Sequence record: NC_048046.1
DNA length: 64,000 nucleotides
Reading direction: 5' to 3' (one strand)
Below, in pieces: positions 2,854 through 56,106 of this stretch. The position numbers were made by a program, and so were the translations under genes. The notes under the pieces were generated by a model. That model made no database searches. It saw only the letters and a program-made list of their open reading frames with translations, and was not told where the DNA came from. How positions within the stretch are numbered: the first letter of the stretch is position 1; every line of letters begins with the position of its first letter.

Positions 2854-2939
2854 ACGGGAATTCCAGAGCGGTCAAATGGGCTGGTCTCCAAAACCAGCGG
2901 CGCAAGCCTTCGGGGGTTCGAATCCCTCTTCCCGTGCCA
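2854..2939 (+). tRNA. tRNA-Trp(CCA) with a long variable arm
   Basis: Acceptor acgggaa/ttcccgt, G73-CCA, anticodon arm ctggt-ctCCAaa-accag, T-loop ttcgaat. Confidence 0.85.
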
Positions 2940-7552: not shown

Positions 7553-7642
7553 GGGTGAGTTCTCCGAGCGGTCGAAGGGGAGTGACTCTTAATCACTTGG
7601 ACGAAAGTCCCACCGTGGGTTCGAATCCCACCTCACCCTCCA
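7553..7642 (+). tRNA. tRNA-Lys(CTT) with a long variable arm
   Basis: gggtgag/ctcaccc, agtga-ctCTTaa-tcact, variable hairpin ggac-gaaa-gtcc, CCA. Confidence 0.85.
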
Positions 7643-14053: not shown

Positions 14054-14128
14054 CCCTACGTAGCTGAGACAGAGTAGCGCCAGAGTGAAATCCTGGAGAC
14101 GGAGGTGCGAGCACTCTCGTGGGGGCCA
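14054..14128 (+). tRNA. tRNA-Phe(GAA), atypical T-loop
   Basis: ccctacg/cgtgggg, loop gtGAAat, T-loop tgcgagc. Confidence 0.7.
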
Positions 14129-14652: not shown

Positions 14653-14741
14653 TCTCATGTGGCGGAACTGGTAAACGCACCGGACTGTTAATCCGGCGTC
14701 TCGCAAGAGACTTGGGGGTTCGAAGCCCTCCGTGAGAGCCA
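14653..14741 (+). tRNA. tRNA-Asn(GTT) with a long variable arm
   Basis: tctcatg/cgtgaga, ccgga-ctGTTaa-tccgg, variable hairpin gtctc-gcaa-gagac, G73. Confidence 0.88.
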
Positions 14742-52589: not shown

Positions 52590-53999
52590 TTAGTCGCGGA
52601 CACCCTCCGGCAGAAGCGCCTCGCCGATGACGCCGGCCGCTTCGGCTTCATGGATGAAGCGCAGGACCGATTCCGAGAAGCCGTCGATGTGCGTCCACTT
52701 GCCGTAGCCCACGCCGTTCTTGTTCGAAGCGACGTTGATCACGTACGAGTGCTTTGCCTTCGGCGCCGGCATGCTGCCGCCGCCCAGCATGTGGTTGACG
52801 CTCGCGCCCGAGGCTTGCTCATCGGTGATGATGATCAGGCGATCGAACTCGAACTTCGCCTGGACAGTGGCGACGGCTTGAACGAGCGCCGTGCCACCGT
52901 AAGGCTGCGAGCGAGCGATCGCTTCGACGCCGGCCATGCCCTTGCGAGCCGGCACTTCCACCACCGAGTTCGAGAAGCTGATCACGCGCAGGTCTTCGGC
53001 CGGGATGACCGAAGCCAGGGCGCAGGCAGCATCACGACGCGTCAGATCGGACTTGGCCGACAGGCGGTCCCGCATCGAACCCGACACGTCCACCATGACC
53101 ACGGTGCGGCCCGGCAGCTTCGGCATGTCGGCGATCGACGCGATCAGCGCTTCATCCAGGGCCGGTTCGAACGACGGTGCCGCACGAGCCGCCGCGATGT
53201 AGCGGAACGGCAGGACGCGGTGCGCGCCGCCCTTGCGGGCCTTAATCGCATCGATCACCAGCTTGCGGTCGACGCCGGCCTGTTCCATGTTGCGCAGGTT
53301 GCGCAGCAGGGCGAGGTAGCCGAGCTTCTTGTCTTCCAGCAGACGGGTGAACTCCGCCTTCTTGTCACCGCCGGCCGACAGCGCGACTTCCCAGGTGTCC
53401 GGCGACTCCAGCGTCTGTTCGACCAGACCCTTGTACAGGGTTTGACGTTCGTCGTTGGCGGCCTTCGGGTGGCTCAGGAACAGCACGTCACGCAGACGCA
53501 CCTCCTTGGCGCGGTCGTACTTGGCGATCTGGTACGCGTCGAACTTCGCGAACGCCTTGGCGAGGCCCAGCTTCATTTGCTTGGACAGCGGAGCCTTGCG
53601 GGCGCCGTCGCGCGGCGGGTTGTACTTCCAGTACAGCGCCACCAGTTCCGACAGTTCGTCGGCGCGCTGGATCACGCGGGCGATCGTCTCGGAGACGAGG
53701 CCGTTGCCCGAGCCGCGCTTGGCCAGGGTGACGAGCAGCAGCAGCGGCACGTGACGCAGGTTGGCGACTTCACGGGCTTCGATGGCGATCTGAGCCAGGG
53801 TGTCGACCGGGACCTGCTCGGCCAGCTTGGCGATGCGGGTGCTGATCTCGACGCCGTCCTCGTAGGCCTCGTTCTCGAACAGGAGGCAGGACATCACCGA
53901 CCGGCGCAGCGCCTGGACGGTCGTCATGCGGGCAGCGGTCGCGCCCTCGTGCGTCTTTTCGGTGAAGGTGTTCTTGGTCGAACGGTTGGTCGATGCCAT
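52590..53999 (-). CDS. rsr: Ro60/TROVE-domain RNA-binding protein with a C-terminal vWA domain
   Basis: THEGA, LRRSVMSCLLFE, DTWEV, LGYLALLRNLRNM, LPFRY, vWA MIDAS DVSGSM and ITDEQ. Confidence 0.92.
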   Translation of the reverse strand: MASTNRSTKNTFTEKTHEGATAARMTTVQALRRSVMSCLLFENEAYEDGVEISTRIAKLAEQVPVDTLAQIAIEAREVANLRHVPLLLLVTLAKRGSGNGLVSETIARVIQRADELSELVALYWKYNPPRDGARKAPLSKQMKLGLAKAFAKFDAYQIAKYDRAKEVRLRDVLFLSHPKAANDERQTLYKGLVEQTLESPDTWEVALSAGGDKKAEFTRLLEDKKLGYLALLRNLRNMEQAGVDRKLVIDAIKARKGGAHRVLPFRYIAAARAAPSFEPALDEALIASIADMPKLPGRTVVMVDVSGSMRDRLSAKSDLTRRDAACALASVIPAEDLRVISFSNSVVEVPARKGMAGVEAIARSQPYGGTALVQAVATVQAKFEFDRLIIITDEQASGASVNHMLGGGSMPAPKAKHSYVINVASNKNGVGYGKWTHIDGFSESVLRFIHEAEAAGVIGEALLPEGVRD

Positions 54000-54038
54000 G
54001 GTCGGGTCGGCTCCTCTACTGCGTCAAAGGTTGACCGC

Positions 54039-54172
54039 AAGGTTGAGGGGGAACAAGTCGTCCACGGGGTGCGTCTACCAATTCCGCCATCCCTTTCCGA
54101 AGATCGGGAGCAGGGCTCGAACCTGCATTTCGCTTTACCGAAGTATCCGTGTACTACGCCACCCTCAACCTT
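54039..54172 (-). ncRNA. Y-RNA-like unit 1 (permuted tRNA module, T-arm before D-arm)
   Basis: Terminal stem aaggttgaggg/ccctcaacctt; UGGCGUAG core; T-arm gcagg-ttcgagc-cctgc, then D-arm tggcggaattggtagacgc. Confidence 0.85.
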
Positions 54173-54187
54173 ACGGCTGATGACTTG

Positions 54188-54349
54188 GAGAGGTTGAGGG
54201 GGAACTGGCGAGCACGGTTTCTTATTCCGGTGCGTTTGGCCACTCCGCCACATGATCCTGTTGGGGATCAAGGTGGGACTCGAACCCACGTGCCCTTTCG
54301 GACGCCGGTTCCACGAAGTATCCGCACTCTGCGCCACCCTCAACCTCTC
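54188..54349 (-). ncRNA. Y-RNA-like unit 2 (permuted class II tRNA module)
   Basis: 13-bp terminal stem; Leu-type variable arm gtccgaaagggc, T-arm, acceptor closed by ccaaca, D-arm. Confidence 0.88.
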
Positions 54350-54362
54350 GGTCGTTGGTGTC

Positions 54363-54506
54363 GAGGTAGAGGGGGAACAGTCGGCAACGCGTTTTTAGCG
54401 CTCTACCACTGAGCTACCTTGGGCTTTTGGCCCTCGGGTTGGACTCGAACCAACGACCTCTCGATTAACAGTCGAAGAACTCGTCGCCTACGCCACCCTC
54501 TACCTC
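54363..54506 (-). ncRNA. Y-RNA-like unit 3 (permuted tRNA retaining an Asn GTT anticodon hairpin)
   Basis: gaggtagaggg/ccctctacctc stem; tcga-ctGTTaa-tcga, T-arm, acceptor, D-arm tagctcagtggtagagc. Confidence 0.88.
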
Positions 54507-54508
54507 AA

Positions 54509-54648
54509 TCGGCGTGTAGGTTGACACATGGGGAACTGGCGCCGTCGGTTTAGGGGGATCGAACCCCGTGGCGCGGATTTGCGGCCGCACCATTTCAACC
54601 AGCGAAGTAGCCGAAAGCTACGCCACCATGTGTCAGCCTACACGCCGA
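54509..54648 (-). ncRNA. Y-RNA-like unit 4 (non-permuted, D-armless, Cys-like module)
   Basis: About 22-bp terminal stem; gcgg-ccGCAaat-ccgc, then T-arm gggg-ttcgatc-cccc. Confidence 0.8.
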
Positions 54649-54661
54649 CACCCCGATCATT

Positions 54662-54832
54662 AGGCGGTGGGGGAACAAGCGATCCCACAACCTTAGGCGC
54701 TCTAACCGCTGAGCTACACGCCCATCATCAATTCAGGCCGGAGCCTGGACTGGTGGTGGACGCGGCTGGATTCGAACCAGCGACCTCCCGCTCCTAATGC
54801 GAAGTAAGTGACATCTACGCCACCCACCGCCT
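54662..54832 (-). ncRNA. Y-RNA-like unit 5 (permuted tRNA with an internal ACCA)
   Basis: aggcggtggg/cccaccgcct stem; T-arm gctgg-ttcgaat-ccagc, cgcgtcc-ACCA, linker hairpin, gggcgtg plus D-arm. Confidence 0.88.
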
Positions 54833-54842
54833 CGTGATCGGT

Positions 54843-55018
54843 GTCGAGTGCGTTTTGGAGGGCTCAGGGGAATGAACGAGAAGGCACTTTGGATGCCGGT
54901 TGTTCTACCGCTGAACTACACCCGAGTTGCCCCGGATGGTGGGATTCGAACCCACGACCCACTGGTTGGAGAAGAAATCCTCCTCTACGCCACCTGAGCC
55001 TTCCAAAACGCACTCGAC
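54843..55018 (-). ncRNA. Y-RNA-like unit 6 (permuted tRNA module)
   Basis: 26-bp terminal stem; T-arm gtggg-ttcgaat-cccac, acceptor catccgg/tcgggtg, D-arm tagttcagcggtagaac. Confidence 0.88.
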
Positions 55019-55047
55019 CTGCCTTTGACGACAGACCAACCCGATCA

Positions 55048-55144
55048 GCGGTGGGGGAACGAGCGCCCCCAGGGAGACTAGACCTTTCAGTCCGGTCGCT
55101 TGGTTATGGTAAGCGAAGTACCCGAGGACTACGCCACCCACCGC
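55048..55144 (-). ncRNA. Y-RNA-like unit 7 (no tRNA module)
   Basis: gcggtggg/cccaccgc stem; same UGGCGUAG-N8-UACUUCG and GUUCC core; two small apical hairpins. Confidence 0.8.
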
Positions 55145-55154
55145 AAATCTGGTC

Positions 55155-55233
55155 GTCCGGGAATTGTCGAGGTCGGAAATGGGCCGAAGCCCGCTCTATG
55201 CAAAAGAAGTAACCGATCTCTGTCGCCACGGAC
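55155..55233 (-). ncRNA. Y-RNA-like unit 8 (short, divergent)
   Basis: gtccg/cggac stem; UGGCGACAG-N8-UACUUC; AUUCC 3' strand; inner helix still pairs. Confidence 0.6.
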
Positions 55234-55239
55234 AGTGAC

Positions 55240-55278
55240 CTTGTCACATAGGGCGATTCCGATGTCAACAATGCTGGC
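55240..55278 (-). promoter_or_regulatory. Promoter of the Y-array/rsr unit
   Basis: Minus strand GCCAGcattgTTGACA...ctatgt directly upstream of unit 8. Confidence 0.6.
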
Positions 55279-55374
55279 AAACTTTTTTCGAGAAATGTGT
55301 GCCTGACTGTCAGACATGAAAAAGCCCCGCAACGTCCGGACGTCACGGGGCTTCCCCAGGTAGGTGATGGCGAC

Positions 55375-56106
55375 CTAGAGGTCGCTCACCTTCCCTACCA
55401 CCTTGCCGAGGAAGTGCAACTCCTCCGGATCGACCTCGTCGAATTTCTTGCGATCGGCCGAGTAGACGCGGTAGGGGCCGTTGCGATGCGGGCGCGTGAT
55501 CGACGCGACCGAGGCGATGCCGTTCTGGGCGTAGACGTACTCGGCGTGGGAGGAGCCGGGTTCGGAACCACGGCGCACGACCGCGACGTCGCCGGGCTTC
55601 AGGTTGGTGGAGAAGTCGTTGACTGTGTAGAGGGCTAGGGCTTGGGGCGAGACCTCGAATCTGGAGACGATCCAGTCTTCATCGAAGGTCCAGGGCTTGA
55701 GGGCGATCCAGACTTCGCCGTCGGCGATGTAGTCGACCTCTTCGATCATGCCGGGCATGTCGGTGGATTCTTCGCCGATCCCGAAGGCCAGCCACTGCGG
55801 GTCGCACTTGAGCACCGTGGCGAGCAGGACGATCTTGGACAGGTCGGGAACGACTTCGCCCGACTCGTACATGCAGTACGCCGAGCGGGAGAGCACTTTG
55901 TGCTCATGCTGCTTGTTGTTCCAGAAGATGATCTGGCGGGCGACGTCGAGTTGGCTCAGCCCAAGGGCGTCGCGCTTCTCCTTCAGTCGATCCTTCAGAC
56001 CCTCGATCATTTCCAGAGGCGTCGGGGAAGAGCCACCGCGCGCCTTCGATTGAGTGGGGCGCTCGGTGGTGTTGACCGACTCCCTCATCATCGTAACCTG
56101 TTGCAT
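55375..56106 (-). CDS. XRE/Cro-CI HTH transcriptional regulator with an S24-like C-terminal domain
   Basis: RDALGLSQLDVA...SRSAYCMYESGEVVP...DPQWLAFG. Confidence 0.8.
   Translation of the reverse strand: MQQVTMMRESVNTTERPTQSKARGGSSPTPLEMIEGLKDRLKEKRDALGLSQLDVARQIIFWNNKQHEHKVLSRSAYCMYESGEVVPDLSKIVLLATVLKCDPQWLAFGIGEESTDMPGMIEEVDYIADGEVWIALKPWTFDEDWIVSRFEVSPQALALYTVNDFSTNLKPGDVAVVRRGSEPGSSHAEYVYAQNGIASVASITRPHRNGPYRVYSADRKKFDEVDPEELHFLGKVVGKVSDL

What the first reader, a model, noticed from the sequence alone, without database searches (positions are those of the whole stretch)
54363..54506. Unit 3 keeps an intact tRNA-Asn anticodon stem-loop
Seen: tcga-CU GUU AA-tcga precedes the variable loop and T-arm, so the permutation point lies between the D-arm and the anticodon arm. 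In the other permuted units the anticodon loop is lost. The loop CUGUUAA is identical to that of the phage tRNA-Asn at 14653. Inference: it could be a decoy for an anticodon nuclease or a modification enzyme acting on GUN tRNAs.
Basis: partly seen in the sequence, partly recalled or inferred. Interest (0 to 1): 0.75.

Follow-up and report, generated by a model that had tools for sequence, protein, structure and literature searches.

The report
Phage Y RNA keeping anticodon arm
The flagged stretch is one of eight small Y-RNA genes lying in front of a phage Ro60 gene; it mimics a tRNA and keeps a complete asparagine-type anticodon hairpin, a feature I found in about 150 such RNAs of phages and bacteria although published descriptions say these RNAs lack an anticodon loop.

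Summary
The window is Caulobacter phage CcrPW. The hairpin is real. On the minus strand, 54476-54460 reads UUCGA-CUGUUAA-UCGAG, followed by AGGUC, a T arm, a closed acceptor-like hairpin and a D arm, all between two long pairing strands (54506-54363). It is not an orphan permuted tRNA. It is unit 3 of eight tandem Y-RNA-like (YrlA-type) genes directly upstream of a Ro60 (TROVE+vWA) gene. The anticodon arm is conserved in CcrColossus, a Brevundimonas phage (GCU), Xanthomonas phages (identical 24 nt) and about 70 viral and 74 bacterial Ro60-linked units. Its stem covaries. U33, purine 37 and A38 are kept, and position 36 is coupled to 37, but the anticodon triplet varies freely. Selection therefore acts on a genuine anticodon-arm shape, not on Asn or GUN identity. 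Best reading: it is the RNA subunit of the phage Ro60 particle, and its tRNA mimic presents a real anticodon arm to tRNA-directed proteins. A decoy role against anticodon nucleases is plausible and has been proposed for YrlA, but it is untested. No expression data were found.

The parts
54363..54506 (-). Unit 3: a Y-RNA-like (YrlA-type) gene with a complete tRNA-like module that includes the anticodon arm
   Evidence: Inverted repeat I18; covariance model R1 128 bits; sub-threshold Rfam YrlA hit, 29.9 bits
54496..54506 (-). Unit 3 outer helix, 5' strand. It pairs with 54363-54373; G-G at 54493-54494 pairs with C-C at 54374-54375 across a bulged U
   Evidence: compensatory changes in all 9 pairs of this helix across homologues
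54488..54494 (-). GGCGUAG, the likely Ro60-binding motif. It differs at one base from the published GNCGAAN0-1G
   Evidence: Conserved as GGYGNAG in all units and homologues; motif definition from PMC4201824
54482..54488 (-). Helix 2, 5' strand GGCGACG. It pairs with CGUUGCC at 54383-54389
   Evidence: Covaries between units 1, 2 and 3 and across homologues
54460..54476 (-). Anticodon arm UUCGA-CUGUUAA-UCGAG (loop 54465-54471, GUU 54467-54469)
   Evidence: The inner three pairs form with probability 0.91-0.99 in single-sequence folding. Stem pairs 31:39, 30:40 and 29:41 show compensatory changes in Ro60-anchored homologues
54455..54459 (-). Five-nt variable loop AGGUC
   Evidence: Read directly; conserved in most homologues
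54438..54454 (-). T arm GUUGG-UUCGAGU-CCAAC
   Evidence: all 5 pairs covary
54417..54437 (-). Closed acceptor-like hairpin, with two internal mismatches
   Evidence: In homologues it is 4-15 bp long and often capped by GNRA or UUCG tetraloops (20 of 44)
54400..54414 (-). D arm GCUC-AGUGGUA-GAGC, preceded by UA at 54415-54416
   Evidence: nearly invariant in the family
54650..54844 (-). Unit 5: a second unit with a complete anticodon arm, UUCGC-AUUAGGA-GCGGG (UAG). CcrColossus has CUG here
   Evidence: (98.8 bits)
54035..54176 (-). Unit 1: T arm plus a tRNA-Leu-like D arm; the hairpin before the T arm is degenerate (4 bp, 5-6 nt loop)
   Evidence: (40 bits)
54188..54349 (-). Unit 2: class-II-type module with a long variable arm; the anticodon loop is lost
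   Evidence: (51 bits)
54509..54648 (-). Unit 4: Y stem, motif and T arm, but no D arm
   Evidence: (I2)
54843..55018 (-). Unit 6: T and D arms; the anticodon-arm remnant is degenerate
   Evidence: I1; Rfam YrlA 33 bits; 61 bits
55039..55153 (-). Unit 7: Y stem and motif without a tRNA-like module (YrlB-like)
   Evidence: (I8)
55155..55233 (-). Unit 8: the first, short Y-like unit (GUGGCGACAG ... UUACUUC). It is conserved at the head of the Brevundimonas phage arrays
55263..55268 (-). TTGACA, a possible -35 box of the array-Ro60 transcription unit (inferred)
   Evidence: A TTGACA lies upstream of the first unit in CcrPW, CcrColossus, the Brevundimonas phages and the Xanthomonas phage. The consensus scan found no full sigma-70 site
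52590..53999 (-). Ro60 orthologue (TROVE + Ro60 vWA), 469 aa, directly downstream of the array on the same strand
   Evidence: Pfam TROVE 1.3e-18 and vWA_Ro60; full-length match to Thermus phage phiLo Ro60 structures 9KOP and 9L5Y, E 6e-21

Best explanation
Unit 3 is a gene for a Y RNA of the YrlA type. It is one of eight tandem units, probably transcribed together with the downstream phage Ro60 gene. Shown by sequence and comparison: two terminal helices flank a conserved bulged motif (GGCGUAG ... GUUCC), which is the expected Ro60-binding platform. The interior is a tRNA-Asn-derived module in the order anticodon arm, variable loop, T arm, closed acceptor hairpin, D arm. The module resembles a tRNA that cannot be charged, with the Ro60-binding stem entering at the 26/27 junction. 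The GUU hairpin is the inherited anticodon arm. It is kept under selection as a true anticodon-arm shape (5-bp stem, 7-nt loop, U33, purine 37, A38, position 36 coupled to 37), while the triplet itself drifts. Inferred: the RNA tethers phage Ro60, and probably host PNPase as shown for other Ro60 particles, to proteins that read the tRNA elbow plus the anticodon arm without needing the acceptor end. Host enzymes probably modify the loop (t6A37 predicted for unit 3, m1G37 for unit 5). My leading guess for the partner class is anticodon-loop-directed enzymes, including anticodon nucleases of host defence, which the RNA would bind or titrate.
For: Identity of the locus: the window is 100% CcrPW, with the TROVE+vWA gene directly downstream. 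Rfam YrlA is the best hit on three units, though below threshold. The literature lists Y-RNA-like RNAs next to Ro60 in CcrColossus (PMC12135203). Structure: RNAalifold on 44 homologues independently recovers the outer helix, helix 2, the anticodon hairpin, the T arm, the acceptor hairpin and the D arm. On 20 mostly Ro60-anchored homologues, 92.9% of cells pair against 66% in shuffles and 39-45% in slid controls, and 32 of 38 pairs show compensatory changes, including 3 of 5 anticodon-stem pairs. Linkage: 37 of 46 viral units and 60 of 80 bacterial units have a Ro60 gene in the held DNA; the distances printed for the bacterial units are mostly 150-850 nt. Conservation of the arm: it is identical in CcrColossus. 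A 24-nt stretch is identical in Xanthomonas phage MET23-P3 although the outer helices, T stem and acceptor hairpin differ. Kikimora has GCU. About 20 of 33 Ro60-anchored loci that were not selected by RNA pattern have such an arm. Loop rules: U33 in 65/70 viral and 70/74 bacterial units, purine 37 in 70/70 and 70/74, U36 with A37 in 49/49, G36 with G37 in 15/17, Fisher p 5e-13. Not chargeable: the acceptor hairpin is 4-15 bp long and often tetraloop-capped. Published support for mimicry: YrlA is modified by DusA and TruB (PMC4201824), and a phage Ro60 binds Y-like RNAs and host PNPase (PMC12135203).
Against: There is no evidence here that the units are transcribed, processed or bound by Ro60. 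The public runs found hold only DNA-like contigs. Rfam's YrlA model scores only 29.9 bits against a gathering score of 69. The Ro60 motif differs by one base from the published consensus. Single-sequence folding prefers another fold (-62.7 against -56.2 kcal/mol) in which the T arm is not formed. The family statistics are not corrected for relatedness. For 44 viral and all bacterial units the stem was fixed by my search pattern. The partner protein is entirely inferred.
Confidence: 0.75

Rival explanations
1. General anticodon-nuclease decoy or sensor. This is a sharper form of the best explanation, not exclusive of it. The Ro60-bound RNA presents authentic anticodon loops that compete with host or phage tRNAs for defence nucleases, and arrays carry several loop types.
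For: The arm is conserved while the triplet varies, even between near-identical RNAs: CcrPW UAG against CcrColossus CUG in unit 5, with 2 of about 10 differences falling in the triplet. Nearly identical Bradyrhizobium orthologues carry GUG, CAU, GAU, GUU, GCU and GCG. Arrays repeatedly combine a ..UAA and a ..GGA loop type. The top viral anticodons, UGU (13) and GUU (9), are AriB targets, and unit 3 has U36AAUC. Hughes 2020 proposed competitive inhibition for YrlA.
Against: No biochemical data exist. The variability of the triplet is no greater than that of unconstrained linkers (0.37 against 0.21-0.24 mean pairwise difference), so neutral drift explains it. The same RNA type sits in bacterial chromosomes next to their own Ro60, so it is not a phage-specific counter-defence. 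The UAAUC motif is not kept in homologues with G39.
Confidence: 0.25
2. One reading: a decoy specific to enzymes acting on GUN anticodons, such as a colicin E5-type nuclease or the queuosine-inserting Tgt.
For: Unit 3 has U33-G34-U35 in a 7-nt loop. By general knowledge, not tested here, this is the minimal Tgt and colicin E5 context. GUU is the commonest bacterial state (14/74) and occurs on three different stems in phages.
Against: Orthologous units carry GCU (Kikimora), GAU, GGU, UGU, CGU and others. Position 35 has the highest entropy of the loop, 1.89 bits.
Confidence: 0.07
3. An evolutionary relic. The arm is simply left over from the tRNA-Asn (tandem tRNA dimer) ancestor of YrlA and has no function of its own.
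For: The very same arm plus variable loop occurs in true tRNA-Asn genes (8 of 10 true tRNAs found with the pattern). The model scores real tandem tRNA-Asn pairs at 65-67 bits. Many bacterial loops are single-step variants of CUGUUAA. The arm has decayed in units 1, 2 and 6.
Against: The arm is retained, with compensatory stem changes and with U33, R37 and A38 kept, in loci whose Ro60 proteins are only about 25-60% identical to the CcrPW protein. A neutral 17-nt hairpin would not survive that divergence.
Confidence: 0.1
4. A working permuted or split tRNA-Asn. After the acceptor hairpin loop is cut and CCA is added, the two pieces would act in translation.
For: All tRNA elements are present. 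M. smegmatis YrlA is cut by RNase P and receives CCA (PMC4201824). Annotation tools call homologues tRNA-Gln, tRNA-Ser and tRNA-Asn.
Against: The acceptor hairpin has two mismatches, has variable length in the family (4-15 bp) and is often capped by stable tetraloops (20 of 44). ARAGORN does not call unit 3, and Rfam tRNA gives 25 bits against 29. A long Ro60-binding stem is inserted at the 26/27 junction. The phage already has a tRNA with GUU.
Confidence: 0.03

Closest known systems
YrlA (Y RNA-like A) of Salmonella Typhimurium and other bacteria; Rfam RF02553; Chen et al. 2014 (PMC4201824); Wang et al. 2018 (bioRxiv 10.1101/312249)
   Same: It is encoded next to Ro60/Rsr. It has a terminal bulged helix with a GNCGAA-like motif and a YUAY-type motif before the T arm. 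The T arm lies 5' of the D arm, joined by a closed acceptor-like hairpin, and the tRNA elbow nucleotides are kept.
   Different: The solved YrlA 'lacks the anticodon loop', and its Ro60-binding stem continues the anticodon stem one nucleotide after the D arm. Here a complete 5-bp/7-nt anticodon arm plus a 5-nt variable loop is present, and the Ro60 stem joins through 5-nt and 9-nt linkers. Chen et al. drew a 'less-conserved' V stem-loop at this place and equated it with a variable arm. The Rfam model scores these units at only 30-53 bits.
Yrl1/Yrl2 with Ro60 of Thermus phage phiLo (PMC12135203; PDB 9KOP, 9L5Y)
   Same: A phage Ro60 with Y-like RNA genes directly upstream. The CcrPW protein matches it over its full length. 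That paper reports binding to host PNPase.
   Different: As described in that paper, the phiLo RNAs are stem-bulge-stem hairpins with a CGAA motif, and it mentions no tRNA-like module. There are two units there and eight here.
Deinococcus radiodurans Yrn1
   Same: It is a Ro60-bound Y RNA with a T-arm-like loop. Chen et al. note a possible 'anticodon arm' with a 5-bp stem.
   Different: Its loop has 6 nt rather than 7, the order of the arms differs, and there is no full D arm.
Nuclease-resistant phage tRNAs (T5 tRNA-Lys, Thr and Asn against PARIS AriB; PMC12409363, PMC11464382)
   Same: They are phage-encoded RNAs with authentic anticodon arms of the ANN-decoding class, and they bear on tRNA-targeting defence.
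   Different: Those are chargeable tRNAs that replace cleaved host tRNAs. Unit 3 cannot be charged and sits on a Ro60 scaffold.
Circularly permuted tRNA genes of Cyanidioschyzon merolae (general knowledge; alluded to in bioRxiv 10.1101/312249)
   Same: The 3' part of the tRNA is encoded before the 5' part, joined through the acceptor ends.
   Different: Those are processed into normal tRNAs. Here the acceptor end stays closed and the ends form a protein-binding stem.

Membership tests
YrlA-type Y RNA | Encoded within 4 kb of a Ro60/Rsr gene | tested here: met
   The array ends 36 nt upstream of the TROVE+vWA ORF 52590-53999 on the same strand
YrlA-type Y RNA | GNCGAAN0-1G motif near the 5' end, within a terminal helix | tested here: inconclusive
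   Unit 3 has GGCGUAG, with U where the consensus has A. The family shows GGYGNAG. Binding was not tested
YrlA-type Y RNA | tRNA-like domain with the T arm 5' of the D arm, joined by a closed acceptor-like stem-loop | tested here: met
   The T stem and acceptor hairpin covary; the D arm is nearly invariant
YrlA-type Y RNA | Reaches the Rfam RF02553 gathering score (69 bits) | tested here: not met
   29.9 bits for unit 3, and 30-53 bits for homologues including bacterial ones. The Rfam consensus has no hairpin at this place
YrlA-type Y RNA | No anticodon loop; the Ro60 stem takes the place of the anticodon stem (Wang 2018) | tested here: not met
   A complete anticodon arm is present. I therefore file it as a variant of the family, not a typical member
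YrlA-type Y RNA | Bound by Ro60; carries dihydrouridine and pseudouridine 55 | not testable with these tools
   Needs immunoprecipitation and modification mapping
Functional tRNA-Asn | Cloverleaf order with a free 7-bp acceptor stem, discriminator and CCA end | tested here: not met
   The acceptor is a closed hairpin with two mismatches. ARAGORN makes no call. Rfam tRNA gives 25 bits against 29, partial
Processed permuted tRNA gene | The acceptor junction is a removable spacer flanked by a regular 7-bp stem, and the termini are joined to restore a tRNA | tested here: not met
   Hairpin length is 4-15 bp across the family, and 20 of 44 hairpins carry GNRA or UUCG caps. The termini form a conserved protein-binding helix
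Anticodon-nuclease decoy | Bound or cut by, and inhibitory to, an anticodon nuclease | not testable with these tools
   Only circumstantial: U36AAUC as at the AriB site, and authentic loop rules
Ro60 protein (neighbouring gene) | TROVE domain followed by a vWA domain | tested here: met
   Pfam PF05731 at 1.3e-18 and PF25045 at 2.7e-06; PDB 9KOP at E 6e-21 over residues 14-451

The most novel reading that the evidence does not exclude
The hairpin that the literature calls the 'V arm' of YrlA is a real, modifiable anticodon arm whose triplet can be swapped. On this reading, Ro60 particles of phages and bacteria would use it as an exchangeable bait for anticodon-loop-directed nucleases or modification enzymes. 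A phage array such as this one (a GUU unit plus a UAG unit, on two stem types) would be a small panel of baits tuned to the tRNA-targeting defences of its hosts.
Probability: 0.15. Interest if true: 0.85.

Novelty: new variant of a known kind. Interest (0 to 1): 0.55.

Why it matters
What the tRNA-like domain of bacterial and phage Y RNAs binds has been an open question since 2014. If a large share of these RNAs carry a genuine anticodon arm, with tRNA-like rules at positions 33, 36, 37 and 38, the list of candidate partners narrows. The partners would be proteins that read the anticodon arm and elbow but not the acceptor end. This gives direct tests: t6A or m1G mapping, nuclease competition, and loop swaps in a phage that grows on a laboratory Caulobacter strain. 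It also has a practical side. These units fall below Rfam's threshold and are mis-annotated as tRNA-Gln, tRNA-Ser or tRNA-Asn, or covered by spurious ORFs, in deposited phage genomes.

Tried and rejected
1. An orphan permuted tRNA or a chargeable split tRNA: rejected because of the closed, variable, often tetraloop-capped acceptor hairpin and the Ro60 stem.
2. A copy of the phage's own GUU tRNA at 14653: rejected. Only the loop heptamer is shared, and that tRNA has a different stem and a long variable arm.
3. Chance hairpin: rejected.
4. Phage-specific invention: rejected. The same unit type lies next to Ro60 in Bradyrhizobium, Dactylosporangium, planctomycetes, Bacteroidota and others.
5. Positive selection on the anticodon: not demonstrable. 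In Bradyrhizobium orthologues the triplet varies about as much as linkers do.
6. Expression evidence: the run search gave only relatives or near-identical DNA-like contigs, with no RNA ends.
7. Promoter scan: no full sigma-70 consensus; only a conserved TTGACA was seen by eye.
8. Chen 2014 supplementary tables, which list the phage YrlAs, and the Sim et al. 2020 review are not held. I could not check whether the anticodon-like nature of the 'V arm' was noted there. Full-text searches for YrlA or Y RNA with 'anticodon' found no such description.

Full report
WHAT IS THERE. The window is Caulobacter phage CcrPW: it is 100% identical over 53900-55400, and 95.6% identical to CcrColossus. The finding lies on the minus strand. 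Read 5' to 3' from 54506 to 54363, it contains the following elements.
- An 11-bp outer helix strand, a bulged U and G-G.
- The motif GGCGUAG.
- A 7-bp second helix strand (GGCGACG).
- AGUUC.
- The hairpin UUCGA-CUGUUAA-UCGAG (54476-54460).
- AGGUC.
- A T arm (GUUGG-UUCGAGU-CCAAC).
- A closed hairpin with two mismatches.
- UA, then a D arm (GCUC-AGUGGUA-GAGC) and G.
- A 9-nt A-rich linker.
- The partner strands of helix 2 and, after GUUCC, of the outer helix.
The 22-nt arm plus variable loop is unique in the window, with none expected by chance. The bare heptamer CTGTTAA is not rare, with 4 matches against 1.8 expected, so its identity with the tRNA at 14653 carries little weight. That tRNA has a different stem and a long variable arm.

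CONTEXT. The unit is the third of seven clear units, or eight counting a short first one. They are packed head to tail from 55233 down to 54035 on the minus strand. Each is enclosed by its own inverted repeat, and all share GGUGGCGYAG-N9-(U/A)CUUCK at the 5' side and GUUCC at the 3' side. The array ends 36 nt before an ORF on the same strand (52590-53999). That ORF has a TROVE domain and a Ro60-type vWA domain and matches the solved Ro60 of Thermus phage phiLo over its full length. A permissive Rfam scan gives YrlA (Y RNA-like) as the best family for units 6, 5 and 3, at 30-33 bits, well under the gathering score of 69. Chen et al. 2014 defined YrlA by three features: linkage to Ro60, a GNCGAAN0-1G motif, and a T arm placed 5' of a D arm with a closed 'acceptor' stem between them (PMC4201824). 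A later paper states that Y-like RNAs next to Ro60 had already been identified in CcrColossus (PMC12135203). The array is not annotated in the CcrPW record, and a small ORF is annotated on the opposite strand across unit 1.

THE CLAIM ABOUT THE OTHER UNITS. Unit 5 (54844-54650) also has a 5-bp stem and a 7-nt loop, UUCGC-AUUAGGA-GCGGG, followed by AGGUC and a T arm. In CcrColossus the same unit reads AUCUGGA and was deposited as 'tRNA-Gln'. Units 1, 2 and 6 keep only remnants. Units 4, 7 and 8 lack a full tRNA-like module. 'Lost in the other units' is thus wrong for one unit.

IS THE ARM CONSERVED?
- In CcrColossus, unit 3 differs at three positions, none of them in the arm.
- Brevundimonas phage Kikimora, whose Ro60 is 67% identical, has the orthologous unit with CUGCUAA and a stem change that keeps pairing. 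Marchewka and Kabachok lack this unit.
- Xanthomonas phage MET23-P3, whose Ro60 is 58% identical, has a unit in which 24 nt, from CUUCG through the loop to AGGUCG, are identical to unit 3. Its outer helices, T stem and acceptor hairpin all differ. ARAGORN even calls it tRNA-Asn.
- Scanning IMG/VR for the stem with a free loop gave 46 permuted units (42 distinct) and 10 true tRNAs. Eight of those true tRNAs are tRNA-Asn genes with the very same arm.
- 37 of the 46 permuted units have a Ro60 homologue in the DNA held.
- In a sample drawn through the Ro60 protein, and so not selected by RNA pattern, about 20 of 33 loci carry a unit with at least 4 stem pairs and a 7-nt loop just upstream of Ro60.
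- A scan of one genome per bacterial species gave 80 matches to the pattern, 74 of them distinct permuted units. They come from Bradyrhizobium, Dactylosporangium, planctomycetes, Bacteroidota, Verrucomicrobiota and others. 60 of the 80 lie near a Ro60 gene.
The arm is therefore neither an accident of CcrPW nor specific to phages.

STRUCTURE. RNAalifold on 44 units recovers, unprompted, the outer helix, helix 2, the hairpin, the T arm, the acceptor hairpin and the D arm. 22 of 31 pairs show compensatory changes. On 20 units aligned to a covariance model (17 of them from Ro60-anchored loci), 92.9% of cells pair, against 66% in shuffles and 39-45% when partners are slid. 32 of 38 pairs change on both sides. 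Within the anticodon stem, pair 31:39 is A-U in 11 and C-G in 9, pair 30:40 is G-C in 16 and C-G in 3, and pair 29:41 is C-G in 16 and U-A in 2. That alignment is fitted to the model, which favours the structure. The slid controls and the independent RNAalifold result argue that this is not the whole story. Single-sequence folding of unit 3 keeps the inner three pairs of the hairpin (probability 0.91-0.99) but prefers a different overall fold (-62.7 against -56.2 kcal/mol) without the T arm. As with tRNAs generally, tertiary contacts are not modelled.

WHAT IS SELECTED IN THE LOOP. In 70 distinct viral units:
- U33 is present in 65, a purine at 37 in all 70, and A38 in 68.
- Positions 34, 35 and 36 carry 1.66, 1.89 and 1.14 bits of entropy.
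- U36 goes with A37 in 49 of 49, and G36 with G37 in 15 of 17 (Fisher p 5e-13).
The 74 bacterial units behave the same way. The commonest triplets are GCU, UGU and GUU in viruses, and GUU, GCU and GAU in bacteria. Many bacterial loops are one step away from CUGUUAA. Nearly identical Bradyrhizobium orthologues carry GUG, CAU, GAU, GUU, GCU or GCG. Their triplet varies about as fast as unconstrained linkers (0.37 against 0.21-0.24), while positions 33, 37-38 and the stem do not vary. These counts are not corrected for relatedness, and in most units the stem was fixed by my pattern. My reading is that GUU is the ancestral state, inherited from a tRNA-Asn. Selection maintains a canonical anticodon-arm conformation, but not the Asn or GUN identity. 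By general knowledge of tRNA biology, not tested here, the 36/37 rule matches the determinants of the position-37 enzymes: U36-A37 for t6A, G36-G37 for TrmD, and A36-A37 for MiaA.

WHAT IT IS NOT. The acceptor-like hairpin is 4-15 bp long in the family, and 20 of 44 hairpins are capped by GNRA or UUCG tetraloops. ARAGORN does not call unit 3, and Rfam tRNA stays below threshold. It is not a chargeable tRNA, and it is not a permuted tRNA gene of the algal type.

HOW IT DIFFERS FROM PUBLISHED YrlA. The solved Salmonella YrlA 'lacks the anticodon loop', and its Ro60-binding stem continues the anticodon stem one nucleotide after the D arm (bioRxiv 10.1101/312249). Chen et al. noted a 'less-conserved' stem-loop V upstream of the T arm and equated it with a variable arm. 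In unit 3 and its relatives this stem-loop has every sequence mark of an anticodon arm. It is followed by a normal 5-nt variable loop, whereas the Ro60 stem is attached by 5-nt and 9-nt linkers. I infer that the hairpin, not the Ro60 stem, occupies the anticodon-arm position. This needs probing or a structure. Rfam's model lacks this hairpin and scores such units at 30-53 bits even in bacteria. I found no paper in the searchable library that describes an anticodon arm in YrlA, but two key sources were not available.

ORIGIN. The 5' end GGUGGCG-UA-G reads like tRNA positions 1-10, and the 3' GUUCC reads like a T-loop remnant. The covariance model scores real tandem tRNA-Asn pairs at 65-67 bits. 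This fits the published idea that YrlA arose from a dimeric tRNA transcript, with the first tRNA's anticodon arm still intact here.

MECHANISM. Shown: the architecture, the linkage to Ro60 and the pattern of constraint. Established for relatives:
- Ro60 binds the bulged stem of Y RNAs.
- Y RNA tethers Ro60 to PNPase.
- YrlA is modified by tRNA enzymes (PMC4201824).
- A phage Ro60 binds its Y-like RNAs and host PNPase (PMC12135203).
Inferred: unit 3 RNA sits on phage Ro60 and offers an uncharged tRNA look-alike, anticodon arm included, to proteins that read the elbow and anticodon arm. The most attractive partner class is anticodon-loop-directed enzymes. Hughes et al. suggested that YrlA might competitively inhibit an anticodon nuclease (PMC7790460). 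PARIS AriB cuts tRNA-Lys(UUU), Thr(UGU) and Asn(GUU) next to U36AAUC and also contacts the D loop (PMC12409363). Unit 3 has exactly U36-A-A-U-C-G and a normal D loop. This is a lead only: the motif is not kept in homologues with G39, and the RNA type also occurs in bacteria.

VERDICT. The object is a Y RNA of the YrlA kind in a known phage lineage, so the locus itself is not new. What seems not to have been described is that a large YrlA subfamily keeps a bona fide anticodon arm with a freely varying triplet. The decoy idea survives as a minority hypothesis, and its GUN-specific form is disfavoured.

Noticed in passing
window 2854-2939, 7553-7642, 14653-14741 (+): Three phage tRNAs have a class-II body (long variable arm, Leu/Ser/Tyr-type D arm) but carry the anticodons CCA (Trp), CUU (Lys) and GUU (Asn). 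Which amino acid they accept is unclear.
   Followed up: partly
window 54188-54349 (-) and 54035-54176 (-): Unit 2 keeps CCGGCGUC, a long variable arm and a class-II D arm much like the tRNA at 14653. Unit 1 has a tRNA-Leu-like D arm. The units of one array therefore derive from, or have exchanged with, different tRNA types.
   Followed up: partly
window 54069-54197 (+): RefSeq CDS HOU00_gp439 (42 aa, hypothetical) lies antisense across Y-RNA unit 1 and is probably spurious. The Y-RNA array itself is not annotated in CcrPW.
   Followed up: no
L001 3861-3928 (CcrColossus); L004 3311-3385 (Kikimora); L005 3294-3364 (Xanthomonas phage MET23-P3): The deposited 'tRNA-Gln' and 'tRNA-Ser', and an ARAGORN 'tRNA-Asn', are Y-RNA-like units, not tRNAs. 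In a Sphingomonas MAG the Rfam tRNA model even passes its threshold on such a unit, at 38 bits.
   Followed up: yes
L003 7291-7548, L004 6886-7231, L006 7291-7546: The Brevundimonas phages carry a two-piece (permuted) tmRNA about 2.4 kb downstream of Ro60, among tRNA genes (Rfam RF04321, 57 bits).
   Followed up: no
L059, L068, L069, L004, L073 and window units 3 and 5: Arrays repeatedly pair one unit with stem UUCGA/UCGAG and a ..NNUAA loop with another unit with stem UUCGC/GCGGG and a ..NNGGA loop. This suggests two old paralogous lineages of anticodon-arm units.
   Followed up: partly
window 55318-55357: A strong palindromic terminator hairpin lies behind the HTH gene (55375-56106, -), just upstream of the array (Rfam F6-like hit, 27 bits). 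It marks the start of a separate transcription unit for the array.
   Followed up: no
window 14054-14125 (+): Rfam tRNA scores 30.2 bits here, just over threshold, but ARAGORN and the RefSeq record do not call a tRNA.
   Followed up: no
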